A DNA stretch of 64,000 bases from Phallusia mammillata. Lineage: Eukaryota. The stretch covers positions 26,102,001 to 26,166,000 of the forward strand of contig OZ281497.1 of NCBI GenBank assembly GCA_965637545.1, in the 5' to 3' direction. The translations under genes were made by a program, and so were the position numbers. The notes under the pieces were generated by a model. That model was not told the origin of the DNA and searched no databases. It saw only the letters and a list, made by a program, of their open reading frames with translations. This document shows, piece after piece, positions 4,617 to 55,713 of this stretch (position 1 is the stretch's first letter; every line of letters starts with the position of its first letter).

Positions 4617-5495
4617 CCAATGTTACAAAATATCATATGTTAATTCGTGTCAAAGCAAACATGAGAAATCAACAACGCGACGTTTGTAAGGTTAATTCAG
4701 GTCATTTTATAATATATTTCTGTAAATACGGACTTTTTCCCGATTTGTAAAGTTTCTTGCTTTTGCATTTGTGCAGCGCTTGTAAGCTTACCCGAATTGT
4801 AAGGCAAGTATTAGAAATGATGACATAGTATAGCATCACATTAACGCTTGCGTTCTTACATTTTTGTTGCAAAATTGCATCTATTGAGATTCTTAGTCAT
4901 GTTTCTGAAAGCAAAAGCAGATACAAAAGCTCATCCCTGATTGAATTTAGTGAAAATAATGAAATTTGCACAGGCACTTCACACTGAGCCTGACTTCAAA
5001 TCAAGTAAGTAATTGGCCAAAAACGCCACTCCAGTATTGCTCAAAATGCGTTTGCAGCCGTTGTGATTATTTGCATGTTGGTCGCTTGTTGCATTTAGGT
5101 TGATGCAATCGGGTGATATCGTGTAAATAAATTGGCTTTTTAGCGACATGTGTTAAGGTTAGTCGTGAAATAAAATGAAGTGACTTTGTGACATTGTATA
5201 AAAAATGTGTCATTATTTTTGATTTTTCTAAACTCATGTAGCAATAACACATACTCTTTAAGTCCCACAACAGCAGTCACAGTCACAACGTCTAAAGTAT
5301 TTATTTACATAATCATCAGTCTCAAGCGAAGATACAAGCGAAAATTTGGGCTACATATAAAAAGCAATTCATTGTTACAAATTAGGTCGCACACTGTTTC
5401 AAATTATCAAAAAATTCATGTAATGAATACTACAAGGCTATACGACTATATTATGATAGTCAGCAAAAGCCGTAATGTACATTCATTTTTAGCAA

Positions 5496-7587
5496 TCAGT
5501 TTGGTTTTACAGACGACATTGTGTCGTTGATGCCTCCCCAAGCTTCCCAGGTCGAATAATTTCCTGGTTTTAAATTGCAGCTGTGTCCGGCATAATTTGC
5601 GTCTCCAAAGACAGTCCAACTATGTAACATACAAACAAAAATGCTGTAAATCAACTGGTAATTACAACTTCAGAAATGCATTTTTCTTACTTTCCCGAGT
5701 GCACTACAATCGAAGATACGATGTCGTTGAAACCAAGATTGCCAAGAAAGTTGCATTCAGAATCTAATTCCACTCTCTTTCCTTGGAAGTTAGCATCCTC
5801 ATATAGTGTAATCTAATAGTCAAAAAAGCAAACAAGACGTTTATAAATACGTAAAACTTTCCAAACACTATGAACAGCAATTGGTCAGTTCATCTTCATT
5901 CTTAACGTACGATTACAATAGACAAACAGGAAAATGCATGTTTTTTTATGATTCTTCTTTCAAACTCATACGCATCCTTTTGTAAGCGCTGTGAATTCTA
6001 TTTTATATTTTGGTTCCCACGCCGCAGTTGCTAAAAAGTTACAGTGTTTGTAAGAAGTAGATATTTTGAAATACAACCCAGAAAAAAATTAAACTTAAGC
6101 AAATCGTTTATATTGTCGTGTTTACGAGACTCTTACATATACATATATTTGCAAGCATATTTTTCTGTAAGATTATAAATAAATTGCCCCTAACGTAAGA
6201 ATCACCAACACGAATATCTTTTATCATTTTAATTTTATTTGGTCTCATATTTGTAGCATTGCGCCTTTTTCGACATACCTACCAAGTTTCACAATTTCAA
6301 GACAAATTTATTTACTTACCGAGGGACAAAGTCTTACAGACGACATGGTGTCGTTACTGCCACCCCAGGCTTGCCAATTTGGGTAACTTCCTGGTTTCAA
6401 ACTGCTGCTTCGACCGGTAAAGTTTGCATCTTCAAAGACTGTCCAACTGTATAATATACAAACTTACAATTTAATATTTGCACTTTCAAGTTGAAATGCT
6501 GGAATCGTTTCCGCAATAAAATGGTCCCACCCAGCATTTCTGATGGACTTCATTAGCCACAGGCCATAATGTCTACAGAATTCATTTGATGTCTATACAT
6601 CACATCATATGTTATTGACAATGAGTTAAGATGGACGATTTGACTCGGTAAAACTTTGAGTTAACTCCACCGCCGTTGTTTCTAATTGATTTGTAGCTGG
6701 AGGTAAATATTTTTTTCTTGTTAATCCAGGATTTTTAAACTCAGTTGCATGTTTGCGTTTTGAGTTCTATGGCCAATTCTCGTTCTCTTACAGTCTTTAC
6801 AAAGTCTACTTACTTTCCAGAATTTACTTTGATCGACGATACGGTGTCGTTAAACCCAAAATTTCCCAGAAACTCACATGCTGTGTTAAGTTTTACCGAT
6901 CTCCCTTCAAAATTCACATTTTCGTAAAGAACAATCTGAAAATAAATGTTAAATCTTTTGCACTACTTTTTGGTATGGTTTGGTATTTACTACAATTTGA
7001 AGTCGATCTACTTTTATAAGTCGCAAACCTACTACGAAAATTTGTATATAGAACTGTATTTTTCATTATTATTTTTAAATTGTGTTTCCATACCGCTTCA
7101 CGTGGCCGGACTGACGATATGGTGTCGTTGGTGCCACCCCAAGCCTGCCATTGCGAGTAGTCTCCAGGTGCGAGATTGTAGGATTTGCCTTCATAGTTTG
7201 CGTCTTCGAAGACTATCCAACTGATGGTAAAATAAGTTGCAAACACATTTGATTTGCTAGTGTTTCAGCTTTAGCTTCTCTCTAGAAGAATATCTTACTT
7301 TCCTGATTCCACTTTGATGGACGACACTATGTCGTTGAAACCATAGTTGCCGATGAATTCGCATTCCGAAGTGAGATTTGCTGCCATTCCTTCATAGTTA
7401 GCGTGCTCGTAAAGTGTGATCTTAAAAAATCATGTTCTGTAAGATAATATTTGTAGGTACCAACAGCTTTAGCAAAACAACATCTTATCGTGTCCAATTA
7501 AAATTACGAAAAAATGCCCAAATAGGTCACCAAACCTTTTTCTCTTTCCTCAGAACAATATTTATAATTCCGTCTCACCTTAGCCAT
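5496..7587 (-). CDS. Three-domain (six Greek key) beta/gamma-crystallin, 250 aa; exons complement(7579-7587, 7299-7420, 7094-7220, 6814-6935, 6320-6446, 5691-5812, 5496-5619)
   Basis: All introns are GT..AG and the exons sum to 753 nt with an unbroken frame. Protein starts MAK|ITLYEHANYEGMAANLTSECEFIGNYGFNDIVSSIKVESGN|WIVFEDANYEGKSYNLAPGDYSQWQAWGGTNDTISSVRPREA, followed by two more homologous domains. Each has the F/Y-x-x-x-x-Y/F-x-G ... S Greek-key signature and closely resembles Ciona betagamma-crystallin (GFNDIVSSI.VESG.W.VF, WGG..D..SSV). Confidence 0.93.
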
Positions 7588-10500
7588 GATTTAGTTGCTG
7601 TAGTCTATGAGCTATAGTTGATGTTATTAAGGAAAGTGAAATTCAGTGTGTGTTTACGCTACCTACACAAAAAATATGTAAATATTATTACGATTTTGGA
7701 TATTATACTGAAATTTTGATCACTTTCTGTTTTTGGTCAGCGTTTTTGCTTCCCCGCGGGTTTCCACAAACATTTATAGCAGTCCAATATTTACACGAAT
7801 ACGATAAGTATCACAAATTTGGACAAATAGCCTTATAACTCTCATTATACTCCACAAAACGTCACTACGAAAATATCTTTGCTTAAACAGGAAAACTACT
7901 CAGTATTCTTGCAATCACACAATAACAGAAGTAACATAATCAACAACCCCAAAATAATAAGACTCTAAATCTTTTGTTCGCAAGCATGTTTGCTTGTACA
8001 TTTACAACATTACAAAGCACAAACTAATCAGGTTTGAAGCAAAGAAACATATTCTAAACTAAAAGAAACTGCACTTCAGTTTGTTTTTTTGAGGTTGCAG
8101 TTGTAAACCGAAGCACTCTAAAATTGACTCTGGTTTGAAGCAATTCTTATGACCGTTTTTATAAAATTTTGGACCTGACATAAGGTAAGTGAAAAACATT
8201 GAATAACAACAAAACAAATGACCCAGAATCACAACGTTTCCTTGAATTTGAGGGGAGAAAAAAAATTGTTAGGTTGTTTTGTGTGGTGTAAAGCGCTTGT
8301 TGGAGTGCAATAGGAGGTGTGAGTATAGATCAGTGTCCACTTCTTTGTCAACGCGTCATAACATTAAAGCTGCAAAAATGATTCGCTGAGTTGCTGTTGT
8401 ACTATTCTGATTCAAAAAACATTTTTGTTCCGGCGTAAGCAGGTTGTGCTCCAATGAATCATTTTACAAACAGAGAATGGAGAAAAGACGAGCGCTAAAA
8501 ACTTACAGAAGTGTAGCAAACACACAAAGCAAACAATTCTATTTCTCATGGTCCGACAAACATGTGCACAAGCGCAACAGGGCGTGTTCGAAATAGCTCA
8601 GAATTCTAGGCTGAATTTACTACAATTTTAACGCCAGGGGCAACCTTTTTGTACAAAGCGCAACATGGACAATTTTTGTTTTCTCATTTAGTACTTAATA
8701 GTTTTGTCGACTTCTTTTTTTATTACTTTACAAATTCTGTTCATGTCCACGAGAAAAGGTATTACTTATCCCAAAGATCCAATTGGCACTCTAAAGCAAC
8801 GAGGTGTGGTGTATATAATACCCTGTAAAGAATGTCTGCTAGTTTAAGTCTGTGAAACAAGAAAATCACATAAGACCCGTCGAAAAAACCTCAACATGAT
8901 GTTACCAACAGCGATGCGAAGAAATCTCCACTGGCCAATCACACAATACCACTAGGCAGCACAATAGATTTTGATACTGCGTTTGTGGCAGTTCGGAAAT
9001 CGAACTCTAGAAAAATATTATTTCTAGAGTGAGGAAACCTTCACCAATCGTGCGACACCATAAACATTAAAATAGATGTTGTAACCTATGCGACAAATAA
9101 TCACATTTTTTTCATTTTTAAACAATTGTCAAATCAGAGTAATTGTCGCGCAAACCTAGCTACAAGTCTGAGCGGCACAAATAACATTCGGATCGAAAGA
9201 GAGTATACGTCTGTTCCTTTACACTTTACAATTGCACACAATAAGCAATCAAAGGCAATTCAAGTTTTTGTCCCATATTTTATTGAGCACATGTTTGATT
9301 TCAGCTTGGGTTGAAAGTTTCCGACCCTGATATACGATGTCACCGCGACCGTTTTCGATATGTCGCCACCCCTCGTCGCCTAAAAAAAGCGCATTACAGA
9401 TCGTATTTCTTTCCTTAGAACTGGTAAACATTAATTTGGGGACAAAGGGGTAAAAACTAGGTGAATCAAACTAAAAGTTACTAAATTCTTTAAAATACTT
9501 TACAATGCAGGAGTCAAGAAAACATGAAACTCCCAGATTATGCGTTTAGAATAGTATACAGGTGTTGTTTTAGTGTCACATTTTTAGCCTGTGGGTAAAC
9601 CGCTGGGTCATCCGCGATGAAGCTTTGCAAGATCAATATTGGACAACTAACTAACTGACATGTATGTAACATTAAAAGAATTTGAAACACTTTTTATTTT
9701 CCAAACGAGTGGAACAAACCCGCATGAGACACAAAAATTGGCAAAGAATAAAAAAGATTTTACATGCGTCCCCCTCAAGAAAATGAAGACATAAGTTATA
9801 TAACTAAACACGTTAATTAAGATTTACTTGTTAAGATTTTAACATTCTAAAACCAGAATCGAAACTAGGTTTGGTGTAAATTAGTGCAATTTGTTTTAGC
9901 GATTCCAAAGATGGACCAATAAAAACAATTTTAGTTGTGTGCCATAAAGTACGAACGAAACCTTTGATTGTCTTAATTAGATGGAAGTTTCGTATTATGG
10001 CGACAAAACTAAACAAAAAAGTTTTTTATATTTCACGCACGTGCCCTTGAAAAGAAGCTAAACCCACCAGTTCCCTAAAACAGAATTGGCGTTCACACAT
10101 AGTATTTTTTTGAATATATATATTTCGATAAAATGTGCCATAATATGCGTTATTCGGTACCATCGACTACGAAAGTATCATTCACATATTTATCATTAAA
10201 CAACGTGGTGGTACATACTAATGACAAGTTCCACAATCGACACAGTTGATGTTTGTTAACACAAACTGTTGAGTAACGAAGCTGTTTAAATATTCCAGTT
10301 GACAGGTCGCGGGCGTGACTGATTTTAGCTTTCAGAGAAAAGGTTCCTGCCCCTTATTTGATTCGTTTTTCCAAATTTGGCAAATATTGAGGACGCAAGT
10401 AGCCCATAGAGGCAATTTATTGAGAGCAAACCATTGTAATTTTACATCACAATTATATCAAATTACAATAACACTTAAAGGTTGTGGTTAAGTTGTTTGT

Positions 10501-32800: not shown

Positions 32801-35648
32801 GCTAAATTCAAAAACATCGCAAAACTTGAAAACAGAATTAGTTTGTTACTAATTTGGTAGAAAATAAAACTGTCGGTCATATATCACACAAAAAATAACT
32901 TTACCTACTCCCGCGATCTGTGCCTAATATTTGCAGTCAATACAGTAAAGGGTAAATGTGCATTTTGCACCATGAGATATACCTTTAAAATCATGTTTAA
33001 ATTTTGTGATACGCAAAAAATGCAACGCATAATTATATTTACTGCCATTATTGCCCTAAACAGAGTTTTTAAACTTTAATTATGTGCAGGAAATCATGTT
33101 GAATAATTTAACGAGATAGGTACAATATATTTTTCAAATTAAGGTTGCAAACTTTTGCATTCACCCGATTGAAACATTGTTTGTTACAGCGCAAATTAAA
33201 TCCAGTTTTGCTATTTGAATCGACCAGGTTGTCATTCGTAATCGAAATCCTAATTACAGTAATACCGGGTTGGATCTGTGTTGAAGCACAAAGGAATGGT
33301 TTTCGACGTCATCAGGAAGAAGAGATGAATCACTGAGGTCGAGCTCATCAGGAAGTAAGGAGGCGAAAGACATAGCAATTTGCAGATCATTCATCTCATG
33401 AGCCCAGCTAAACACTCGACCATCTCTTGTTATGCTGTTACCGGTCAAGAATTCGGTTAACAAGACTTTCTTTAGTAACCAATCTTCACTGGAAGTTGCA
33501 TCGACAAGGCTTTCAAGAGTATTAAAAACCGAAGAATCACAGATTCCGAAGACAAATTTGGAAACAACTTCCCATCTGTCCTCAGTTAGTTGCTTCAGTT
33601 GCTTTTCAAATTTCGTGAAGGGCATGATGATCATCATGTAGAAAGCGGCAAAAAATTCCTGCCAGGTGAGGTGAGAAAAGTATCTTATTTTGTGTCCGTC
33701 TAATATCGTCAGCTTCAGATTCACTTGCTTTGTTACTGATGTGGTAAGGAAGGCGTCGGCTGTGGAAGATTTAATTCCAGCTTTTTTAAAGTTCTTGTCT
33801 TTATATACCAATTTGCCTTTAAGAAATGTATCCCAAGCCATTTTGGCCAGTTTGTCCAATTCGCATTCTTGGCCCTGGAGATGATCTGTTGTTACGTATT
33901 GGCTACAAGTAAAAGCAAAAACCCGCGTGAGCGAAACAAACTGAATATCTCCATCGTAACTCATCAGGTAGTTGAGTGTCAATATGAAATTTGCAGGAAC
34001 ATAGCAGTACGCAAATACATAAGGATTTTGGGTCAGTTTTTGATGTATCTCATTATATTTTTCGCCACATAGCTGACGTCCGAGTTCATTCCGTGATGTT
34101 TGAGTTAAACCAAGTATCTGGACTATAAACTTAGGTCGGTATGATGGATGGAGCTTGTATAGTTGAGCTGGACGTGATGTAAAAATCTTTCGAGCACGTG
34201 GAAGCAAGTTTCCTGCAGCCAAATGCTTCAAATAACATTCTGCAGAGTTTTTTCCATGTAATATTGGTTTCGAAACCGAACTTGAAAATGATTCGAATGC
34301 TGCCTCATCTAAACCATCGAAAATGATTAAAACATGAGAATCACTGCAAATAGCAGTAAGTATAATGTTTGCCTCGTCAGGTGTGCAGTTCCATTCTGAC
34401 AACATTGCGGAAATGAGAAACTGAAGGAGTGTCATTTTTGCTGTGAAGTTAAGGAGCCTGATCACAATGTAAAAAACAAATGATACCCTTCCACACAATT
34501 GTCCATCTAACGCTTGCAGGGCCCACTTTTTAGCTGAAGTGGTTTTTCCTATTCCAGCTTGTCCAATCACACCAATTACATTTCCATGTTTTTCAATGTA
34601 GTTGTGCTTTGTCTCACTTTTGTTTGCTTTAAACTTCTTCTCCGCCTCTTGTTGTGCAATCTGTTTTGCACGAGAGAACATTTCTTCACCGGTAATGTCA
34701 CTTTCTGGTAAGTTGTAAAGTTCCTCTCTGCGGTGATAATGCCCTTCTGCTAAAAACTCGTCGTCAATTTGTTGTGGTTTGTTGACCATGGCAACAGGGA
34801 CGGGTTCTATGGCTTTGTCTAAAAACTCAGCTAGTGTCGATTCTTCACTGGCAGTAGCTCTGACTTCTCTCTTTAGTCGATACTTTAGTTGTTCACCTAA
34901 ACAAGAAAAAATTCTATGAAAAACAAATCGCATCACGCCAGTATGCTCTACGCAATATTATTGAACGGCAATTTTAAGTAGAATTGTATTTTTTAAATAA
35001 ACAAACAACTTGATCATACATATATCATTTTCTGTGACTTGTGTTGTTTGTTCATGTTGACTAGCTGAAGACCGAGCTGATGTAGAATGACTTCTCGATG
35101 TCCGAGGTTGTGTTGCAGTAGCACGGAGGTTTTCTGGTGCCGTTTCGAGTGATGAAGTCGACTGGTTGTGACATGTATGTGGTTGATGTGATGCAGACGG
35201 GGTTTCATCAAATGATTTTGGCGAGGTTTCTTCCTTCGTAGCAACTAGTGCAGGTGATTGTGTTGAAGTGTGGGGTTGTTCATGTATATGCTGAACTGTT
35301 TGTTGTTGTATAGAGTAGAAATGTTGATGAAGTTTTACTGGTGCGTTAAACACTGGTCCGGTTGTGTGGATGTTTGTGTCTCCAAACTGAGGCGCCTCTG
35401 CTTTATCCTGCAAATTCACGCACGTAATTAAATAAACAAATACTTTTCATTTTTTTAATTCTTACAATGTTTATAACTTTGTTTTCTTGACCGATTGGAC
35501 AAATTTGACTGGAGCTTGTTTGGGGTACAACTTCACTTGATTGTTCGAATGGGCTTGATTGTGGTAGAATGTCACCCAAGCTTGGGGTTGGGCTGGGCAC
35601 GGATGTAGCATTCTCAGATTCGGGCGTATTTGATGCGTCATCGGCCAT
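26820..35648 (-). CDS. NLR-B: NACHT-LRR receptor, 951 aa; exons complement(35466-35648, 35020-35407, 33266-34896, 32388-32549, 30518-30679, 29449-29613, 26820-26984)
   Basis: Walker A GQAGIGKTT, Walker B LIIFDGLDE, IFTSRP sensor and FSHLTWQEFFAA winged-helix motif lie in the 1631-nt exon. Three phase 0-0 RI-like LRR exons and a terminal LRR exon follow. Splice sites are GT/AG and the exons total 2856 nt in frame. Confidence 0.9.
28618..29051. mobile_element. hAT-type MITE in the last intron of NLR-B
   Basis: TIR TAGTGTTTCCCAACC / GGTTGGGAACCACCG and a perfect TSD GTATAGAC. Confidence 0.88.
31039..31542. mobile_element. hAT-type MITE with internal (TTAGAA/TTAGA)n arrays, in an NLR-B intron
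   Basis: Perfect 18-bp TIR CAGACTTGGACAACTAGA and TSD TATATAAC. The empty site is present in the paralogous intron at about 51474. Confidence 0.92.
31585..32160. mobile_element. Two inverted 3' fragments of a Penelope-like element in an NLR-B intron
   Basis: Both strands encode GIY-YIG C-terminal-like peptides (PDYRERQFRESWKIHQ...MNIKT..LSECYRRLL and PDYRKRIVRESWNIHQ..MNIKT), each followed by a hammerhead-like motif. Confidence 0.75.
32104..32152 (+). ncRNA. Minimal type-I hammerhead ribozyme motif (Penelope-associated)
   Basis: CUGAUGA at 32111-32117; stem II GACG-CCU/AGG-CGUC; GAAA at 32139-32142; palindromic ACGU stem III; GUA cleavage triplet at 32144-32146; stem I UUCC/GGAA. Confidence 0.65.
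33266..34896 (-). CDS. NACHT-domain exon of NLR-B
   Basis: Long ORF in the track (33254..34936). Acceptor tttag|GT at 34896 and donor CCG|gtatta at 33266 give phase 1 in, phase 0 out. Confidence 0.93.
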
Positions 35649-49300: not shown

Positions 49301-52300
49301 CATCGAGTTTTGGCTTTTTCTCCGGTGTTTCACAGAAAAATGTTAACAAACAGGTTTTTCTGCGCCCGTACACACACTGCGACCAAAAACAGTCGCATCA
49401 TGACGTGTTTATCTGCGCACCGTCAGTTTGCCACTTATGTTTTATGATAGAGTTTCTCAAAATTTCCATGCATGGGACGCAATGACAAAGTTTTATTCCG
49501 CGGCACACCAGGCAGGTAAACACAAACTTGTAAAAAAAGCAATTTGCAACTTTATTGTGTTAGATAAGATTGCTTTTTATGACAACTCAAAACGAATAAC
49601 ATTTTAACGTTGTACTGCACGCTTGTATTCAAATATAAGTCTTATATACCACCAGATAATGTTTGCACTTTAGAATAGCAAATTTTGAAATTTCTCAGTG
49701 GGCACCAATGTGCTGCGACCAAGGATATCAGTATGGTATGGTACGATACGCAGAAGATATCATGAAACAGTACGATACGTAGGCCCGGTACGCAAAGAAA
49801 GCAGAGGTACTGGTACGGAACAATGGTACGCCTCTTCACCTGAGCGTACCACCGTGATGGTACACATAATAAATGCAGATTTAAAGGTTTTTTTTCAATC
49901 GTTACCATTAGCAGATAATATTGAAATTGCCAGAATGTTGAATTTTAATTGTTTGTGACATGATTTCATCACAATGTCACTGTACCAAAAGAGGAATAAA
50001 GCAGTTGATGACGTCACTGCATAATATTTTGTCCTTACAGGGCTGACTGCTATGCAATAGGAGATTTACACGCACTGTAGGTCGAATGTTAAAACGCGCA
50101 CATGACAATAACATAGTAAATCTCGTAGTCTTTTTTGCACCAATGATTTGGCATTAAAATATATGCTGTTGATCAACCCTTAATTTCGAATGCGCGGGTT
50201 ATGCAGTGGGTTAAATGGGGCAGGCCTCCTTATTAAATGGGGCAGGTTGTTAAATGGGGCAGGCCTCCGTTAAGCGCCATCTTGGTATCACTCTCCGTAG
50301 CGAGGTACGTGGTACGGTCAACACCAAACTTACCGTACCGTACTGCCATCCTTGGCCCCGACACACAGTTTAAGAATCAATGTTAGGTATTGACGGGGCT
50401 GTAGCTATAACTACTGGAACTCTGTAAGGTCATATGTTAATGCATTACACTTTTTTTTCGACTTTTGTGATCTGCATAATGGGTCGCAATTGGATATTGT
50501 AAATACAAAAACCGAGCAGCATTAGAGGTATCGAAGAGTCACATGCGTCTCCGGGACGTAGATTTGCAAACCCTTGTATACCAGAAAAAACTCATAACAT
50601 CACAAAAATATTGAACCATTTAAAAATCCACACTGTGAACTGAGTATTAATCGCCTTGCATTACGTTCACCTTTCGTAAGGTGTATTTGACTTGCGATAC
50701 AGAATCGCAGATTGGACTGACTACTTAGCATAAAAATATGCTTAGAAAATAAGTGTGGTAAACATGAATGTTTTATATGTACCAAACAGTTTCAACAAAT
50801 GTGGGTTTAATTAGGGGTTATTCACAGCGATAAACATTTGAGTGGCGTTATTGTAGTACAACTCAACTAGCAAAGGCTTTGAAAAGTCAGATTGCTGCCC
50901 TCTAACAGAGTTGCTCAACCTTTTTGGCTTTTGGATATCAAGAAAAAACAAAAATCGTTCGGCACCCCAGCGTACGCTCGACATGGAATAAATAACTGAT
51001 GTTACTACTTTCCTTTAGGTAATTAGATAAAAATGTTGGCAAATATTATCTTAACAAACAATACCGGAGTAGTGAAACATTTCAAAAATGGTTGTCAGCA
51101 ATTCTAAGACAAACAAATGGCAACCCAGAGAGAAACATAAAACACTGTTCGCCTACATACGAAAGCCTAAATTACCTACAGGTGTTTTCAGTTGCAGTAC
51201 AGCACAACAGAGTTGTCTGATTCCTTCACTTCCGATGTCACATCCACAAAGCACCAGCTTTTCGATTTTGTGAAGACAACGAGCCAACGAAATTGCACCC
51301 AGATCACCGATTTTGTTGTCGGAGAGGTCGAGTATCTGCAGCTGATGTTGAATTAACAACAAGCACATGTTAATTTGCGACTCTATTGTGGTATTGTGGT
51401 TGGTTTTAATGACAACTAAAAAAGAACAAGTTTTTAAACGTTGTAATGGACGCACGTTTTTCGTTATAAGTCTTATATAACACCACAATAACAAGCTATT
51501 GCTGCCAGTCATAGTTTGTAGAGCTTTTTTTGGCAAATGTGATTGTATTCCGACGTTTCGACGTCCTATACAGGTCGTCTTCATAAGGATAAATAACACT
51601 AAATGCGACTAGTGCAATGCACGCTGAACACCACAATGTTTGCACTTTAGAAGAGCTAATTTTTGGCAACACATTTGGAAATATCTCGCGGCGCACCAGT
51701 GTGCCGCGACACACAGTTTAAGAATCACTGTTTGATCGTATAGAAGTGGCTGTAGCTGTACTACTGGAAATCACATTTGTAATCGCATTGCAAGCTTCAT
51801 TTTCGACATTTGTGATATGCATATTTGTCGCAACTGAATATTGTAAATATGTTGTAATGACAAAAACTGAGCCGCATTAGAGTGATCGAAGAGGAAACGC
51901 ACTCTGAAGCCGCCATGATATGTGTAAAAGTTAAAAAATCAAAAGTTTTAAAAAAATATTGAAGCACACAACAACCCAAACTGCTGTCAGTAGAGTATTT
52001 GTCGCCTTGCTTTACGTTCACCTTTCGTAAGGTTTATTTGAGTTGCAATTCAGAATCGCAGATTGGTCTGACTACCTTACACAAAACAGTGCTTAGAAAA
52101 TAAGAGTGGTAAACATGAATGTTTTATGTGCAACAAACAGTTCAAAGAAAATTTAAATATAGCGACTATCTGACACAGTAGTGTGCAACTGTCGACTGTG
52201 GCTATTTAATATAATTTGTTAATTTCACAGCAATAAACATTTGTGTCGTGTTTTTGTATTATAACTCAAATAGCAAAGGTTTTGAAATTACGTAAACTAA

Positions 52301-55300
52301 TAAAAATAACTTTCTAGAAACTGTGCACGTATAGATGGATATATTACTTACAGGCGTCTTTAGTTGCAGTATGGTTTCGCAGAGATGCCTGACTCCTTCA
52401 CTTCCGATGTCGCATCTCCACAGGACCAGATACTCGATTTTGTGAAGGCAACGAGCCAACAAAGATGCACCCAGATCACCGATACTGTTGTCGGAGAGGT
52501 CGAGTTTTTTCAGCTAATGTTGTAGTTAAAATAAACAAATGTTAACACATGACAAAGCAGATTTTGAAACACCACCAACAGAGTGAACAATTCTAAACTT
52601 CAAACAATAGGTGCTTCCATTTATCTTTTTGTTGGTTTGTAACATGTATAATAAGCCACAGCTAAAAGTCTCTTTTTCAAACTTATACCACAAGTCAAAA
52701 CTTGCAGTTCGACAATTTGAGTCGTTGAATTGAAAAACATCGCAAAACTTGGGAGCAGAATTATTTTTTTACTATGCGCAATTTATTTGCCTTTTGATGC
52801 CAGCATAAGCTGCCCATAATGTCATGCGTTACACGCAACGTAACCTTACCAACTCCCTAAAATAAAGCATGAGAATCATATTCTCCACATGTCAAAGTAG
52901 TAATTAATTTCGCGCTGTAAAATGCCAACACTGTTATTTGGTGACGGTGGCATGTTTTAATATACTGGATAAAACCAACAGTACCACCATTTAAAATGCC
53001 ATTTACTGACAATGGCAGTTGTTGACATTTTCAATAAAAGTAGCGCAAGCTGCCAGGAAAAAAAGCTTTCCAACGTTTCAAAAAATTACTGTAAAAAGTT
53101 GTAAAACAGTACCCTGTGACGTCACACATCCTTTTTTTCGGTCACAACAAAACGAAAAAGTAGAGATACTGCCTTATTAGCAGCAGCCGAAAATTGTCTT
53201 GGTGTTCATAATCAGTACTTTTTACGTTATATTTATTTTGTTTGAACAAAATCATGTTGTTAAATTTTATATTCTCCTCATAGGAACATTGTTTTGGCAG
53301 CGGAATTTAAACCACAGTATTACCGGGTTTGTTCTGTGTTGAAGCACGAAAAAAAGGTTCTCGAAGTCATCGGGCAGAAAAAATGTATCGCTGCAGTGTA
53401 GCTCATCAGGAAGTAGGGGAGCAACAGAGAAAGCAATTTCTACATCATTGGACTCATGAGCCCAGCTGCAAACTCGCTTGATGTCATTTAGGCAAAGATT
53501 TCTGTTCGACGTAGTGAGCTCGAACATCAAAAACTTTTTAAGTGACCAATTCTGACTGAATCTGGTTGGAATTAGAGCTTTGAGTCCATTAACAACCGAA
53601 GGATTGCAAATCCCGAAGGCAAATTTGGAAACAACTTCCAATCTATCGTCAAACAATTGCATGTAAACATCCACAAACTCGTCACTGGGCATGATCATCA
53701 TCAGGTAGAAGGCGGAAAAAAACTCTTGCCAGGTGAGGTGAGAAAAGTATCTTACTTTGTGTCCATCTAATATCGTCAGCTTGAGATTTACTTGCTTTGT
53801 TATTGATGTGGTGAGGAAGGCGTCGGCTGCGGAAGGTTTTATTCCAGCTCTTTCAAAGTCCTCGGCATCAAACATAATCTTACCCTTTCGAAATGCATTC
53901 CAAGCCATTTTAGCCAGTTTGTCTAATTCGAATTCTTGGCCCTTTAGATGATCTGTTGTTAAGTATTGGCTACAAGTGAAAGCAAGAATTTGGGTAAGCG
54001 AAACAAACTGAATATCTCCTTCGTAATTCACCAAGTAATTAAGTGTCAATATGAAATTGACAGGAACATAACAGTAAGCATATACATTAGGGTTTTGAAC
54101 AAGTTTTTGATGTATGATATGATATTTGTTCCCACATATCTGACGTCCGAGTTCATTCTGTGATGTTGGAGTTAACCCATGTATCTGGACTATAAACTTG
54201 GGTCGGTATGAAGGATTGAGCTTGTATAGTTGAGCTGGTCGTGATGTAAAAATCTTTCGAGCTCTAGGAAGCAAGTTTCCTCCCGCTAAATGCTTCAAGT
54301 AACATTCTGCAGTATTTTTTCCATGTAGCGTTGGTTTTGAAACCAAACTGGAAAATGACTTAAATGCTGCCTCATCTAAGCCATCACAAATTATTAATAC
54401 ATGAGGGTCACTACAAATGGCAGCGAGTATCATGGTTGCCTCTTCAGGTGTGCAAATCCAATCCGATAACATGGTGGAAATGAGAAACTGGAGGAGTGTC
54501 ATCTCTGCCATAAAATTAAGCAGCCTGATCACTATGTAAAATACAAACGTTAATCGTCCACACAGTAGTCCATCTACCGCTCGGAGGGCCCACTTTTTGG
54601 CTGAGGTGGTTTTTCCTATTCCAGCTTGTCCAACCACAGCGACTACATTTCCATGTTTTTCGATGTAGTTTTGTTTTGCTTCTATTTCATGAGCTTTGAA
54701 TTTTTTCTCAGCTTCTTGTTGTGCAGTTTGTTTTGCACGAGGGAACATTTCTTCACTGATAATGTGACTTTCTGGTCTTTTGTAAAGTTCGTCTCTGCGG
54801 TTGTGATGTCCTTCTGCTAGAAACTCGTCGTCAATTTGTTGTGGTTTGTTGATCATGGCAACTGGAACGGTTTCTATTGCTCTGTCTAAAAACTCAGCTA
54901 GTGACGATTCTTCACTGGCAGTGGCTTTGACTTCTCTCTTTAGTCGAGACTTCAGTTGTTCACCTAAACAAGAAAAACTATGTGAAACACAAATCTCATC
55001 ACGCCAGTATACACTACGCAGTGTTATTGAGTGGTAAGTTTAAGTTGATTTGTATTTTAAATGAACAAACAAACTGTTCATACATATTTCATTTTCTGTG
55101 ACTTGTGTTGTTTGTTCATGTTGATTTGCTGAAGACTGGGCTAATGTAGATTGGCTTCCCGGTGTCCCTGGTTGTGTTGCAGTAGCACAGAGGTTTTCTG
55201 GTGCCGTTTCGAGTAATGAAGTCGACTGGTTGCGGCTTGTACACGGTTGATGTGATTCGGACGGATTTTCAGCAAATTTTGGCGAGGTTTCTTCCTCCAA

Positions 55301-55713
55301 AGCAACTGGTGCAGGTGGTTTTGTTGAAGTGTGGGGTTGTTCATGGCTATGCTGAGCGGTTTGTTGTTGCTGAACAAGGGTATAATAATTGTGTTGATGA
55401 AGTTCCACTGGTGCGTTGTACACTGGTCCAGTTGTATGGATGTTTGTGTCTCCAAACTGAGGCGCTTCTGCTTTATCCTGCAAATTCACTCACGTAATTA
55501 AAATAAACAAACACTTTTGTTTTTGTTTTTATTTCTTACAATATTTATAACTTTGTTTTCTTGACCGATTGGACACATTTGACTGGAGCGTGTTTGGGGT
55601 ACAACTTCCCTTGATTGTTCGAATGGGCTGGACTGGGGTAGAACTTCACCCAAGCTTGGGGACAGGGGTTCAGCATTTTCAGATTCAGGCGTATTTGACA
55701 CATCTTCGTCCAT
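46322..55713 (-). CDS. NLR-C: NACHT-LRR receptor, 953 aa; exons complement(55540-55713, 55084-55477, 53324-54963, 52352-52513, 51180-51341, 48064-48225, 46322-46489)
   Basis: Same exon structure as NLR-B. Walker A GQAGIGKTT, Walker B LIICDGLDE, IFTSRP, FSHLTWQEFFSA; three 162-nt LRR exons; exons total 2862 nt in frame. Confidence 0.9.
49720..50354. mobile_element. MITE (hAT-like) in an NLR-C intron
   Basis: TIR CAAGGAT(ATC/GGC)AGTAYGGTAYGGTA; degenerate 8-bp TSD GCTGCGAC/GCCCCGAC; empty site GCCGCGAC at about 51703; internal TTAAATGGGGCAGG x3. Confidence 0.75.
51510..51630 (-). mobile_element. Penelope-like terminal fragment in an NLR-C intron
   Basis: Near-identical to 31585-31700, including the CTTATGA...GAAACGTC motif. 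Confidence 0.7.
53324..54963 (-). CDS. NACHT-domain exon of NLR-C
   Basis: Long ORF in the track (53267..54856) extended to the acceptor at 54963; donor CCG|gtaata at 53324. Confidence 0.93.

What the first reader, a model, noticed from the sequence alone, without database searches (positions are those of the whole stretch)
5496..7587. Three-domain beta/gamma-crystallin built by exact tandem triplication of a Ciona-type two-exon domain
Seen: MAK micro-exon followed by exon pairs of 122+127, 122+127 and 122+124 nt. Each exon is one Greek key; introns are phase 2 within a domain and phase 0 between domains; linkers are very short (PREA, LCPS). Established: Ciona betagamma-crystallin is single-domain, and vertebrate lens beta/gamma-crystallins have two domains. 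Inference: this may be an independent tunicate route to a multidomain crystallin, with an odd, unpaired third domain that could drive oligomerisation. It is informative for how two-domain lens crystallins arose.
Basis: partly seen in the sequence, partly recalled or inferred. Interest (0 to 1): 0.72.

Follow-up and report, generated by a model that had tools for sequence, protein, structure and literature searches.

The report
Three-domain calcium-type crystallin gene, sea squirt
A sea-squirt gene of seven small exons appears to encode a 250-residue protein made of three beta/gamma-crystallin domains that keep their calcium-binding motifs, built by copying a two-exon unit three times; it is a real but fairly ordinary new member of a well-known family, and its transcript is still unconfirmed.

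Summary
A 9-nt ATG-GCT-AAG exon is followed by exon pairs of 122+127, 122+127 and 122+124 nt. All six introns are GT..AG, phase 2 within a domain and phase 0 between domains. Each of the six larger exons passes Pfam's Crystall cut-off alone, as the first or second half of the domain. The copies are 62-68% identical, with saturated synonymous sites and dN/dS about 0.16-0.20, so the triplication is old and all three domains are under constraint. Only the seven-exon splice gives a complete reading frame.

All six motifs keep the fold signature and the canonical Ca-binding motif. Per motif, Ciona crystallin is the closest solved structure for the four exons scored. The three copies group together in motif trees, so the triplication looks lineage-specific.

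An exhaustive search of 1.84 billion protein representatives found no close relative. It did find amphioxus four-domain and sponge-type three- to five-domain proteins, so the architecture is not unique. The position matching the central residue of the lens-crystallin domain interface is polar in all three domains, so nothing supports the pairing/oligomerisation idea.

Steps needing the joined protein (transcript look-up, full-length search, structure prediction) were left out. The scan had not noted this before.

The parts
7579..7587 (-). Exon 1: ATG GCT AAG (Met-Ala-Lys), followed by a phase-0 GT donor
   Evidence: Read directly. [quoted passage not shown]
7299..7420 (-). Exon 2 (122 nt): domain 1, A-type Greek key; ends in phase 2
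   Evidence: Translation. Pfam Crystall 31.6 bits, profile positions 2-41. Ciona 2bv2 single stretch 20.3 bits.
7094..7220 (-). Exon 3 (127 nt): domain 1, B-type Greek key plus the linker PREA; ends in phase 0
   Evidence: Translation. Pfam Crystall 46.2 bits, profile positions 43-81. 2bv2 gives 43.1 bits in one stretch; the best single gamma-crystallin stretch gives 35.9 bits.
6814..6935 (-). Exon 4 (122 nt): domain 2, A-type Greek key
   Evidence: Translation. Pfam 36.3 bits. 2bv2 is the top hit. No Met codon, so the domain cannot start translation on its own.
6320..6446 (-). Exon 5 (127 nt): domain 2, B-type Greek key plus the linker LCPS
   Evidence: Translation. Pfam 43.0 bits.
5691..5812 (-). 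Exon 6 (122 nt): domain 3, A-type Greek key
   Evidence: Translation. Pfam 37.5 bits. 2bv2 single stretch 33.2 bits, 22/40 identical. No Met codon.
5496..5619 (-). Exon 7 (124 nt including TGA): domain 3, B-type Greek key; the protein ends ...KPN
   Evidence: Translation. Pfam 36.6 bits.
7773..7778 (-). TATAAA 191 nt upstream of the ATG (candidate promoter element; consensus match only)
   Evidence: Pattern scan.
5300..5305 (-). AATAAA 191 nt downstream of the stop codon (candidate poly(A) signal; consensus match only)
   Evidence: Pattern scan.

Best explanation
This is one protein-coding gene of a sea squirt. Spliced as seven exons, it encodes a 250-residue protein with no signal peptide, made of three tandem beta/gamma-crystallin domains joined by four-residue linkers. 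It arose from a Ciona-type single-domain gene (a 3-codon first exon, then one Greek key per exon). The two-exon domain cassette is flanked by phase-0 introns, so it can be copied in frame, and it was duplicated in tandem twice, long ago. All three domains have since been kept under purifying selection. Each domain keeps both halves of the two canonical calcium sites, giving six predicted sites. The domains lack the hydrophobic patch that glues lens-crystallin domains together. Inferred: the protein most likely works as three independently folded, calcium-stabilised domains in a row, a multivalent version of the Ciona protein acting as a calcium-binding or structural protein. It is not a lens-like paired crystallin.
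For: Shown: exon coordinates, GT..AG at all six introns and a consistent phase pattern. Every exon passes Pfam Crystall alone, as the correct half-domain. pN is 0.14-0.23 against pS 0.54-0.91, so dN/dS is about 0.16-0.20 wherever dS can be computed. Exons 4 and 6 have no Met, domains 1 and 2 have no stop codon, and no strong-donor start mini-exon lies in introns 3 or 5, so only the 7-exon splice gives a complete frame. The signature Y/F-x4-Y/F-x-G and the motif N-D-x-x-S-S are present in all six motifs; the motif is defined in PMC3551895. In Ciona the same N-D-I-V-S-S stretch shows the largest calcium-induced shifts (PMC13724631). Ciona 2bv2 is the best single-motif match among solved structures for the four exons scored. 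The three copies form a clade in both motif trees. At the positions matching the gammaD interface residues Met43/Phe56/Ile81, the window has I,T,T / N,S,N / R,C,N.
Against: There is no transcript evidence. The exhaustive protein search found no matching full-length protein from any transcriptome or annotation. Calcium binding, folding and domain independence are inferred from sequence only, because no structure prediction was possible without joining exons. The phase-0 cassettes could also be skipped in frame, so shorter isoforms are possible. Tree support is modest (85-89 SH-aLRT on 40 columns), and the Ciona motifs could not be included as rows.
Confidence: 0.78

Rival explanations
1. The gene is real, but its main products are one- or two-domain isoforms made by skipping a whole domain cassette (exons 2+3, 4+5 or 6+7), or by alternative ends. 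The three-domain form would then be minor.
For: Each cassette is bounded by phase-0 introns, so skipping exons 2+3 or 4+5 keeps the frame. No transcript data were available to exclude this.
Against: All three domains show equally strong purifying selection. All splice sites are canonical. Nothing in the sequence marks any cassette as optional.
Confidence: 0.1
2. These are three separate single-domain crystallin genes in tandem, as in Ciona, wrongly merged into one model.
For: The only tunicate crystallin described in the papers read here is single-domain (PMC2929430).
Against: Domains 2 and 3 have no start codon in their first exon. No ATG mini-exon with a good donor lies in introns 3 or 5. 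Domains 1 and 2 have no stop codon, and the gap between domains 1 and 2 is only 158 nt.
Confidence: 0.03
3. It is an unexpressed relic or a decaying duplicate array rather than a working gene.
For: The product is absent from a collection of about 15 billion proteins, searched through its 1.84 billion cluster representatives, which includes transcriptome-derived proteins.
Against: All frames and all 12 splice signals are intact, although synonymous sites are saturated, and dN/dS is about 0.2. Every fold-signature and Ca-motif residue is kept in six out of six motifs.
Confidence: 0.06
4. It is an assembly artefact, with one domain falsely expanded into three copies.
For: Tandem repeats can be mis-assembled.
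Against: The copies are only 63-78% identical in DNA and have unrelated introns of different lengths. The window contains no N.
Confidence: 0.01

Closest known systems
Ciona intestinalis beta/gamma-crystallin (Ci-betagamma, PDB 2BV2; Shimeld et al. 2005 as cited in PMC2929430)
   Same: Both have a 3-residue N-terminal arm on its own exon, one Greek key per exon, A-then-B motif order, no signal peptide and canonical N-D-x-x-S-S calcium motifs in both motifs (the A-motif stretch GFNDIVSSI is identical in domains 1 and 3). Both lack the lens-type interface hydrophobics. It is the best per-motif match among solved structures for the four exons scored.
   Different: The Ciona protein has one domain (83-84 aa); this one has three (250 aa). 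Motif identity to Ciona is only about 45-55%, so this is not a close orthologue. I could not test whether this species also has a single-domain orthologue.
Amphioxus beta/gamma-crystallins (Bf-bg1-4; 348-aa four-domain models such as XP_035670548.1, 'beta/gamma crystallin domain-containing protein 1-like')
   Same: They are non-lens, multi-domain chordate beta/gamma-crystallins without a signal peptide, and some domains have calcium motifs. Their B motifs are 45-55% identical to the window's.
   Different: They have two or four domains. Their introns lie inside the motifs rather than between them, and they have no separate N-terminal-arm exon (PMC2929430).
Vertebrate lens gamma- and beta-crystallins
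   Same: The fold family is the same. The B motifs are about 50% identical to gamma-crystallin motifs 2 and 4. From my own knowledge, not tested here: gamma-crystallin genes also start with a 3-codon exon (Met-Gly-Lys) and have a phase-0 intron between the domains.
   Different: Lens proteins have two domains paired through Met43/Phe56/Ile81 and Val132/Leu145/Val170, and their calcium motifs are degenerate. Here there are three domains, the central interface position is polar, the calcium motifs are intact, and the linker is 4 residues instead of about 12 (my count from the bovine gammaB sequence, from memory).
Sponge-type multi-domain beta/gamma-crystallins (P0174, 'epidermal differentiation-specific protein-like', Halichondria panicea; relatives P0090 with 3, P0006 with 4, P0024/P0099 with 5 domains)
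   Same: They are tandem arrays of calcium-motif domains with very short linkers and no signal peptide. P0090 has exactly three domains in 262 aa.
   Different: They are a different subfamily: the B motifs end in IGNDVISSV and lack the W-x2-WGG pattern. P0090 is intronless, and its organism is not established. They are unrelated in origin to the window's triplication.
Myxobacterial Protein S-like two-domain proteins (P0100 on bacterial chromosome CP114039.1; P0085)
   Same: They give the highest per-motif identity of any database hit (49-59%), and their calcium motifs are canonical.
   Different: They are bacterial, have two domains and no introns. The similarity probably reflects shared retention of the calcium-binding consensus, not close kinship.

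Membership tests
beta/gamma-crystallin superfamily (Pfam PF00030 Crystall) | Profile match above the curated cut-off | tested here: met
   All six exons score 31.6-46.2 bits individually against a cut-off of 25, as the correct half of the 82-position profile.
beta/gamma-crystallin superfamily (Pfam PF00030 Crystall) | Greek-key signature Y/F-x-x-x-x-Y/F-x-G and the conserved structural Ser in every motif | tested here: met
   Positions 4-11 read Y/F-x4-Y/F-x-G in six of six motifs, and Ser is invariant at A33-34 and B35-36. The signature is as given in PMC3551895.
beta/gamma-crystallin superfamily (Pfam PF00030 Crystall) | A-type then B-type motif order, with the Tyr corner (G-x-Y) and a conserved Trp in the B motif | tested here: met
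   The B motifs have PGDY, PGSY and PGNY, plus invariant W1, W24 and W27. W27 aligns with the gamma-crystallin Trp in Q-Q-W-M-G. The corners are described in PMC2929430.
beta/gamma-crystallin superfamily (Pfam PF00030 Crystall) | Double Greek-key beta-sandwich fold | not tested
   Predicting a domain would require joining two exons.
Calcium-binding beta/gamma-crystallins | Canonical N/D-N/D-X-X-S/T-S motif in both Greek keys of a domain | tested here: met
   The motifs are NDIVSS, NDTISS, NDTVSS, NDTMSS, NDIVSS and NDTMSS. The motif definition is in PMC3551895.
Calcium-binding beta/gamma-crystallins | Measured calcium binding or stabilisation | not testable with these tools
   This needs ITC or thermal unfolding of the protein.
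Urochordate (Ciona-type) beta/gamma-crystallin | Gene plan: a separate 5' exon for the N-terminal arm and one motif per exon | tested here: met
   E1 encodes Met-Ala-Lys, and E2-E7 each hold one motif. The Ciona plan is as described in PMC2929430.
Urochordate (Ciona-type) beta/gamma-crystallin | Single domain (two motifs) | tested here: not met
   There are three domains and six motifs in one reading frame.
Vertebrate lens beta/gamma-crystallins | Two domains paired through a hydrophobic interface (gammaD Met43, Phe56, Ile81 / Val132, Leu145, Val170) | tested here: not met
   There are three domains. The equivalent B-motif positions 2/15/40 are I,T,T / N,S,N / R,C,N.
AIM1 / CRYBG proteins | Six beta/gamma domains (12 motifs) fused to a long N-terminal region and a C-terminal ricin-type trefoil | tested here: not met
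   The 250-aa product contains nothing but three Crystall domains. The flanking ORFs have no Pfam domain. The AIM1 architecture is as in PMC2929430.

The most novel reading that the evidence does not exclude
Multi-domain, calcium-binding beta/gamma-crystallins with the vertebrate-style gene plan may not be a one-off in this species. They could be widespread in ascidians or ancestral to tunicates plus vertebrates. In that case the single-domain Ciona protein would be a secondary reduction, and domain duplication would predate the lens. Alternatively, the three short-linked domains could pair between molecules and form calcium-dependent chains or gels in a sensory or adhesive organ.
Probability: 0.1. 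Interest if true: 0.6.

Novelty: new member of a known kind. Interest (0 to 1): 0.36.

Why it matters
Textbook accounts of lens evolution go from a single-domain tunicate crystallin to two-domain vertebrate crystallins, and papers up to November 2026 still treat the Ciona protein as the tunicate form. This gene shows that in the sister group of vertebrates the same domain cassette, with the same exon plan, was multiplied in frame and kept. That is a natural worked example of the step assumed for the vertebrate ancestor. It also offers a three-domain, six-site calcium-binding protein to compare with Ci-betagamma in stability and assembly studies. The event is a parallel one, though, and multi-domain non-lens relatives are already catalogued in amphioxus, sponges and bacteria. 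The finding therefore refines the accepted picture rather than changing it.

Tried and rejected
1. Word-indexed protein searches all failed to reach a tunicate relative. I tried exon 3 inside its 116-aa stop-free frame, exon 2, and an alignment of the six exons as separate rows with a 128-aa amphioxus fragment. The first two found no candidate at all. The third returned sponge-type, bacterial and unnamed proteins, but not the 84-aa Ciona protein.

2. The exhaustive HMMER search with the B-motif profile ranks by summed score. Its top 150 is therefore filled with many-repeat bacterial proteins and AIM1-like giants, and single-domain relatives fall below the list. It does exclude a close multi-domain relative, which would be expected to score about 180 bits or more; the best non-bacterial hits scored 139 bits.

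3. P0085, P0100 and P0140 looked like possible two-domain animal relatives. They sit on bacterial or metagenome contigs and were rejected as tunicate kin.

4. I looked for independent starts for domains 2 and 3 and found none with a good donor.

5. I searched the window for further crystallin genes or tandem paralogues and found none. Nearby ORFs have no Pfam domain, and there is no Rfam hit or tandem repeat within 16 kb.

6. Six literature searches for multi-domain, ascidian or Phallusia crystallins turned up no description.

7. The order of the two duplications could not be resolved. The B exons say domains 2 and 3 are closest (78% DNA identity), while the A exons say domains 1 and 3 are.

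Full report
**What is there.** The feature lies on the minus strand. Reading the reverse complement gives ATG GCT AAG followed directly by a GT donor (7587-7579). Six further exons follow:
- E2 7420-7299 (122 nt)
- E3 7220-7094 (127 nt)
- E4 6935-6814 (122 nt)
- E5 6446-6320 (127 nt)
- E6 5812-5691 (122 nt)
- E7 5619-5496 (124 nt including TGA)

All six introns (158, 78, 158, 367, 507 and 71 nt) begin GT and end AG. Introns are phase 0 after the first exon and between domains, and phase 2 inside each domain. The split codon is AA|T (Asn) in all three domains. The coding total is 753 nt, or 250 residues. 'Exact' applies only to this architecture, not to the sequence.

**Is it more than chance?** I translated each exon separately by reference. 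Each passes Pfam's curated cut-off for Crystall (PF00030) on its own. The 122-nt exons match profile positions 2-41 and the 127/124-nt exons match 43-81, with E-values from 2e-7 to 5e-12. A translated search of the whole 64-kb window finds exactly these six motifs and no others. Equivalent exons are 62-68% identical in protein. Their differences are concentrated at synonymous sites: pS is 0.54-0.91, which is saturated, against pN 0.14-0.23. This gives dN/dS of about 0.16-0.20 wherever dS can be computed. Only the exons and a few splice-site bases are repeated; the introns are unrelated. The triplication is therefore old, and all three domains have been kept by selection. An assembly artefact is excluded by this divergence.

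**One gene or three?**
- Exons 4 and 6 contain no Met.
- Domains 1 and 2 end without a stop codon.
- Reading through any intron gives an early stop or a frameshift.
- A scan of introns 3 and 5 finds no ATG mini-exon with a good donor that could feed exon 4 or 6 in phase.

The seven-exon splice is therefore the only complete reading frame. A TATAAA lies 191 nt upstream of the ATG and an AATAAA lies 191 nt after the stop; both are consensus matches only. There is no signal peptide, because the protein runs from Met-Ala-Lys straight into the first beta-strand motif.

**What kind of crystallin?** All six motifs carry the Greek-key signature Y/F-x4-Y/F-x-G and the structural serines. The B motifs carry the G-x-Y tyrosine corner and the conserved tryptophans. 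All six also carry the canonical calcium motif N/D-N/D-X-X-S/T-S, here NDIVSS, NDTISS, NDTVSS, NDTMSS, NDIVSS and NDTMSS. The motif is defined in PMC3551895. In the Ciona protein the same N-D-I-V-S-S stretch shows the largest calcium-induced NMR shifts (PMC13724631). Six calcium sites are thus predicted, two per domain.

Among solved structures, vertebrate gamma-crystallins top the lists only because two motifs add up. Taken one motif at a time, Ciona 2bv2 is the best match for the four exons I scored. It gives 43.1 bits for B1, against at most 35.9 bits for a single gamma-crystallin motif. For the three A exons it gives 20.3, 27.0 and 33.2 bits, against 15-21 bits for beta-B1. Exons 5 and 7 were not scored against the structures. 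The gene plan matches what Kappe et al. describe for Ciona and for vertebrate beta-crystallin genes: a separate exon for the short N-terminal arm and one motif per exon. It differs from amphioxus, where the introns fall inside the motifs (PMC2929430). 'Ciona-type' is a fair label.

**Origin.** In maximum-likelihood trees of single motifs (one row per exon), the three window A exons form a clade against 62 other motifs (SH-aLRT 89), and the three B exons do the same against 63 (SH-aLRT 85). The comparison set covered amphioxus, vertebrate, sponge-type, bacterial and AIM1-like motifs. Identity to the Ciona A motif is 45-55%, read from the alignments. The best database motifs reach 49-59%. Both are below the 62-68% seen between the gene's own domains. 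The simplest reading is two rounds of in-frame tandem duplication of a phase-0-bounded cassette within this tunicate lineage, independent of the vertebrate duplication.

Two caveats apply. There are only 40 columns per tree, and the Ciona motifs could not be entered as rows because I had no reference for them. The order of the two duplications is also unresolved: the B exons put domains 2 and 3 closest (78% DNA identity), while the A exons put domains 1 and 3 closest. Local gene conversion may explain this.

**How it probably works.** In lens gamma-crystallins the two domains are held together by Met43, Phe56 and Ile81 and by Val132, Leu145 and Val170. In the HMMER alignment these correspond to B-motif positions 2, 15 and 40. 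The window has I,T,T at position 2, N,S,N at position 15 and R,C,N at position 40, so the centre of the patch is polar in every domain. The Ciona protein likewise lacks these hydrophobics and is monomeric. The linkers are only four residues long.

I infer three independently folded, calcium-stabilised domains in a row: a multivalent, non-secreted calcium-binding or structural protein. I do not infer a lens-like paired protein with one domain left over.

**Relatives and novelty.** The claim depends on the absence of relatives, so I ran the one exhaustive HMMER search, using a profile of the three B exons against 1.84 billion representatives. It gave 991 hits at E<=1e-3. Nothing scored at the level expected of an orthologous three-domain protein, about 180 bits or more; the best non-bacterial hits reached 139 bits.

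The top hits were:
- many-repeat bacterial proteins
- AIM1-like giants
- mis-merged fish gamma-crystallin arrays
- an amphioxus four-domain model, P0003, named 'beta/gamma crystallin domain-containing protein 1-like'
- a sponge-type family with one to five domains; its one named member is from Halichondria panicea

That last family includes P0090, which has exactly three Crystall domains in 262 aa. P0090 is encoded without introns on metagenome contigs of unknown organism. P0052 also has three Crystall domains; its N-terminal signal peptide suggests a bacterial origin, which I did not check.

The product of this gene thus seems absent from public protein collections, which would be surprising if the genome were an annotated Ciona. 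The papers I could search describe no multi-domain tunicate crystallin. Three tandem beta/gamma domains are nevertheless not a new architecture, and multi-domain non-lens forms already exist in invertebrate chordates. I file it as a new member of a known kind, of moderate interest to crystallin-evolution specialists.

**Species.** Earlier notes of this scan call the genome a sea squirt. One names Phallusia mammillata (s1-403057) and another is headed 'Ciona' (s1-380859). I did not verify either, and I use them only as context.

I did not build, translate, save or search the joined 250-residue product. This rules out a full-length homology search, an exact look-up of transcript contigs that might carry the spliced product, and structure prediction of a domain or of the whole protein. 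The only place where exon strings were put side by side was a G+C count (44% in exons against 26-35% in introns). Because of these omissions, the transcript, the fold and the domain arrangement remain inferences.

**Surroundings.** No other recognisable gene lies within about 8 kb on either side. Further along the same strand are two NLR-like genes (NACHT, NOD2 winged helix, LRR) whose long ORFs are 73% identical.

Noticed in passing
window 33254-35419 (-) and 51153-55489 (-): There are two NLR-like genes about 20 kb apart. Their long ORFs of 560 and 529 aa carry Pfam NACHT, and the second also carries the NOD2 winged helix. An LRR_6 ORF lies at 51153-51599. The two NACHT ORFs are 73% identical over 514 residues, which suggests a recent tandem duplication.
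   Followed up: partly
window exons 5/7 (6320-6446, 5496-5619) versus exons 4/6 (6814-6935, 5691-5812): The cassette shows discordant divergence. The B-type exons of domains 2 and 3 are 78% identical in DNA (dS 0.95), but their partner A-type exons are only 63% identical (pS 0.89). Among the A-type exons, domains 1 and 3 are closest. Local gene conversion is possible; this remains unexplained.
   Followed up: partly
L001:3001-3789 and L002:3001-3789 (ENA metagenome contigs of 132 kb and 500 kb): P0090 is an intronless gene for a 262-aa protein with exactly three beta/gamma-crystallin domains. It is 40% identical to a two-domain protein of the sponge Halichondria panicea. Its source organism is not established.
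   Followed up: partly
L005:3001-3552 (bacterial chromosome CP114039.1, 9.8 Mb): The highest per-motif identity to the sea-squirt exons in the whole protein library (49-59%) belongs to a bacterial two-domain Protein S-like protein (P0100, P0085), not to any animal protein listed.
   Followed up: no
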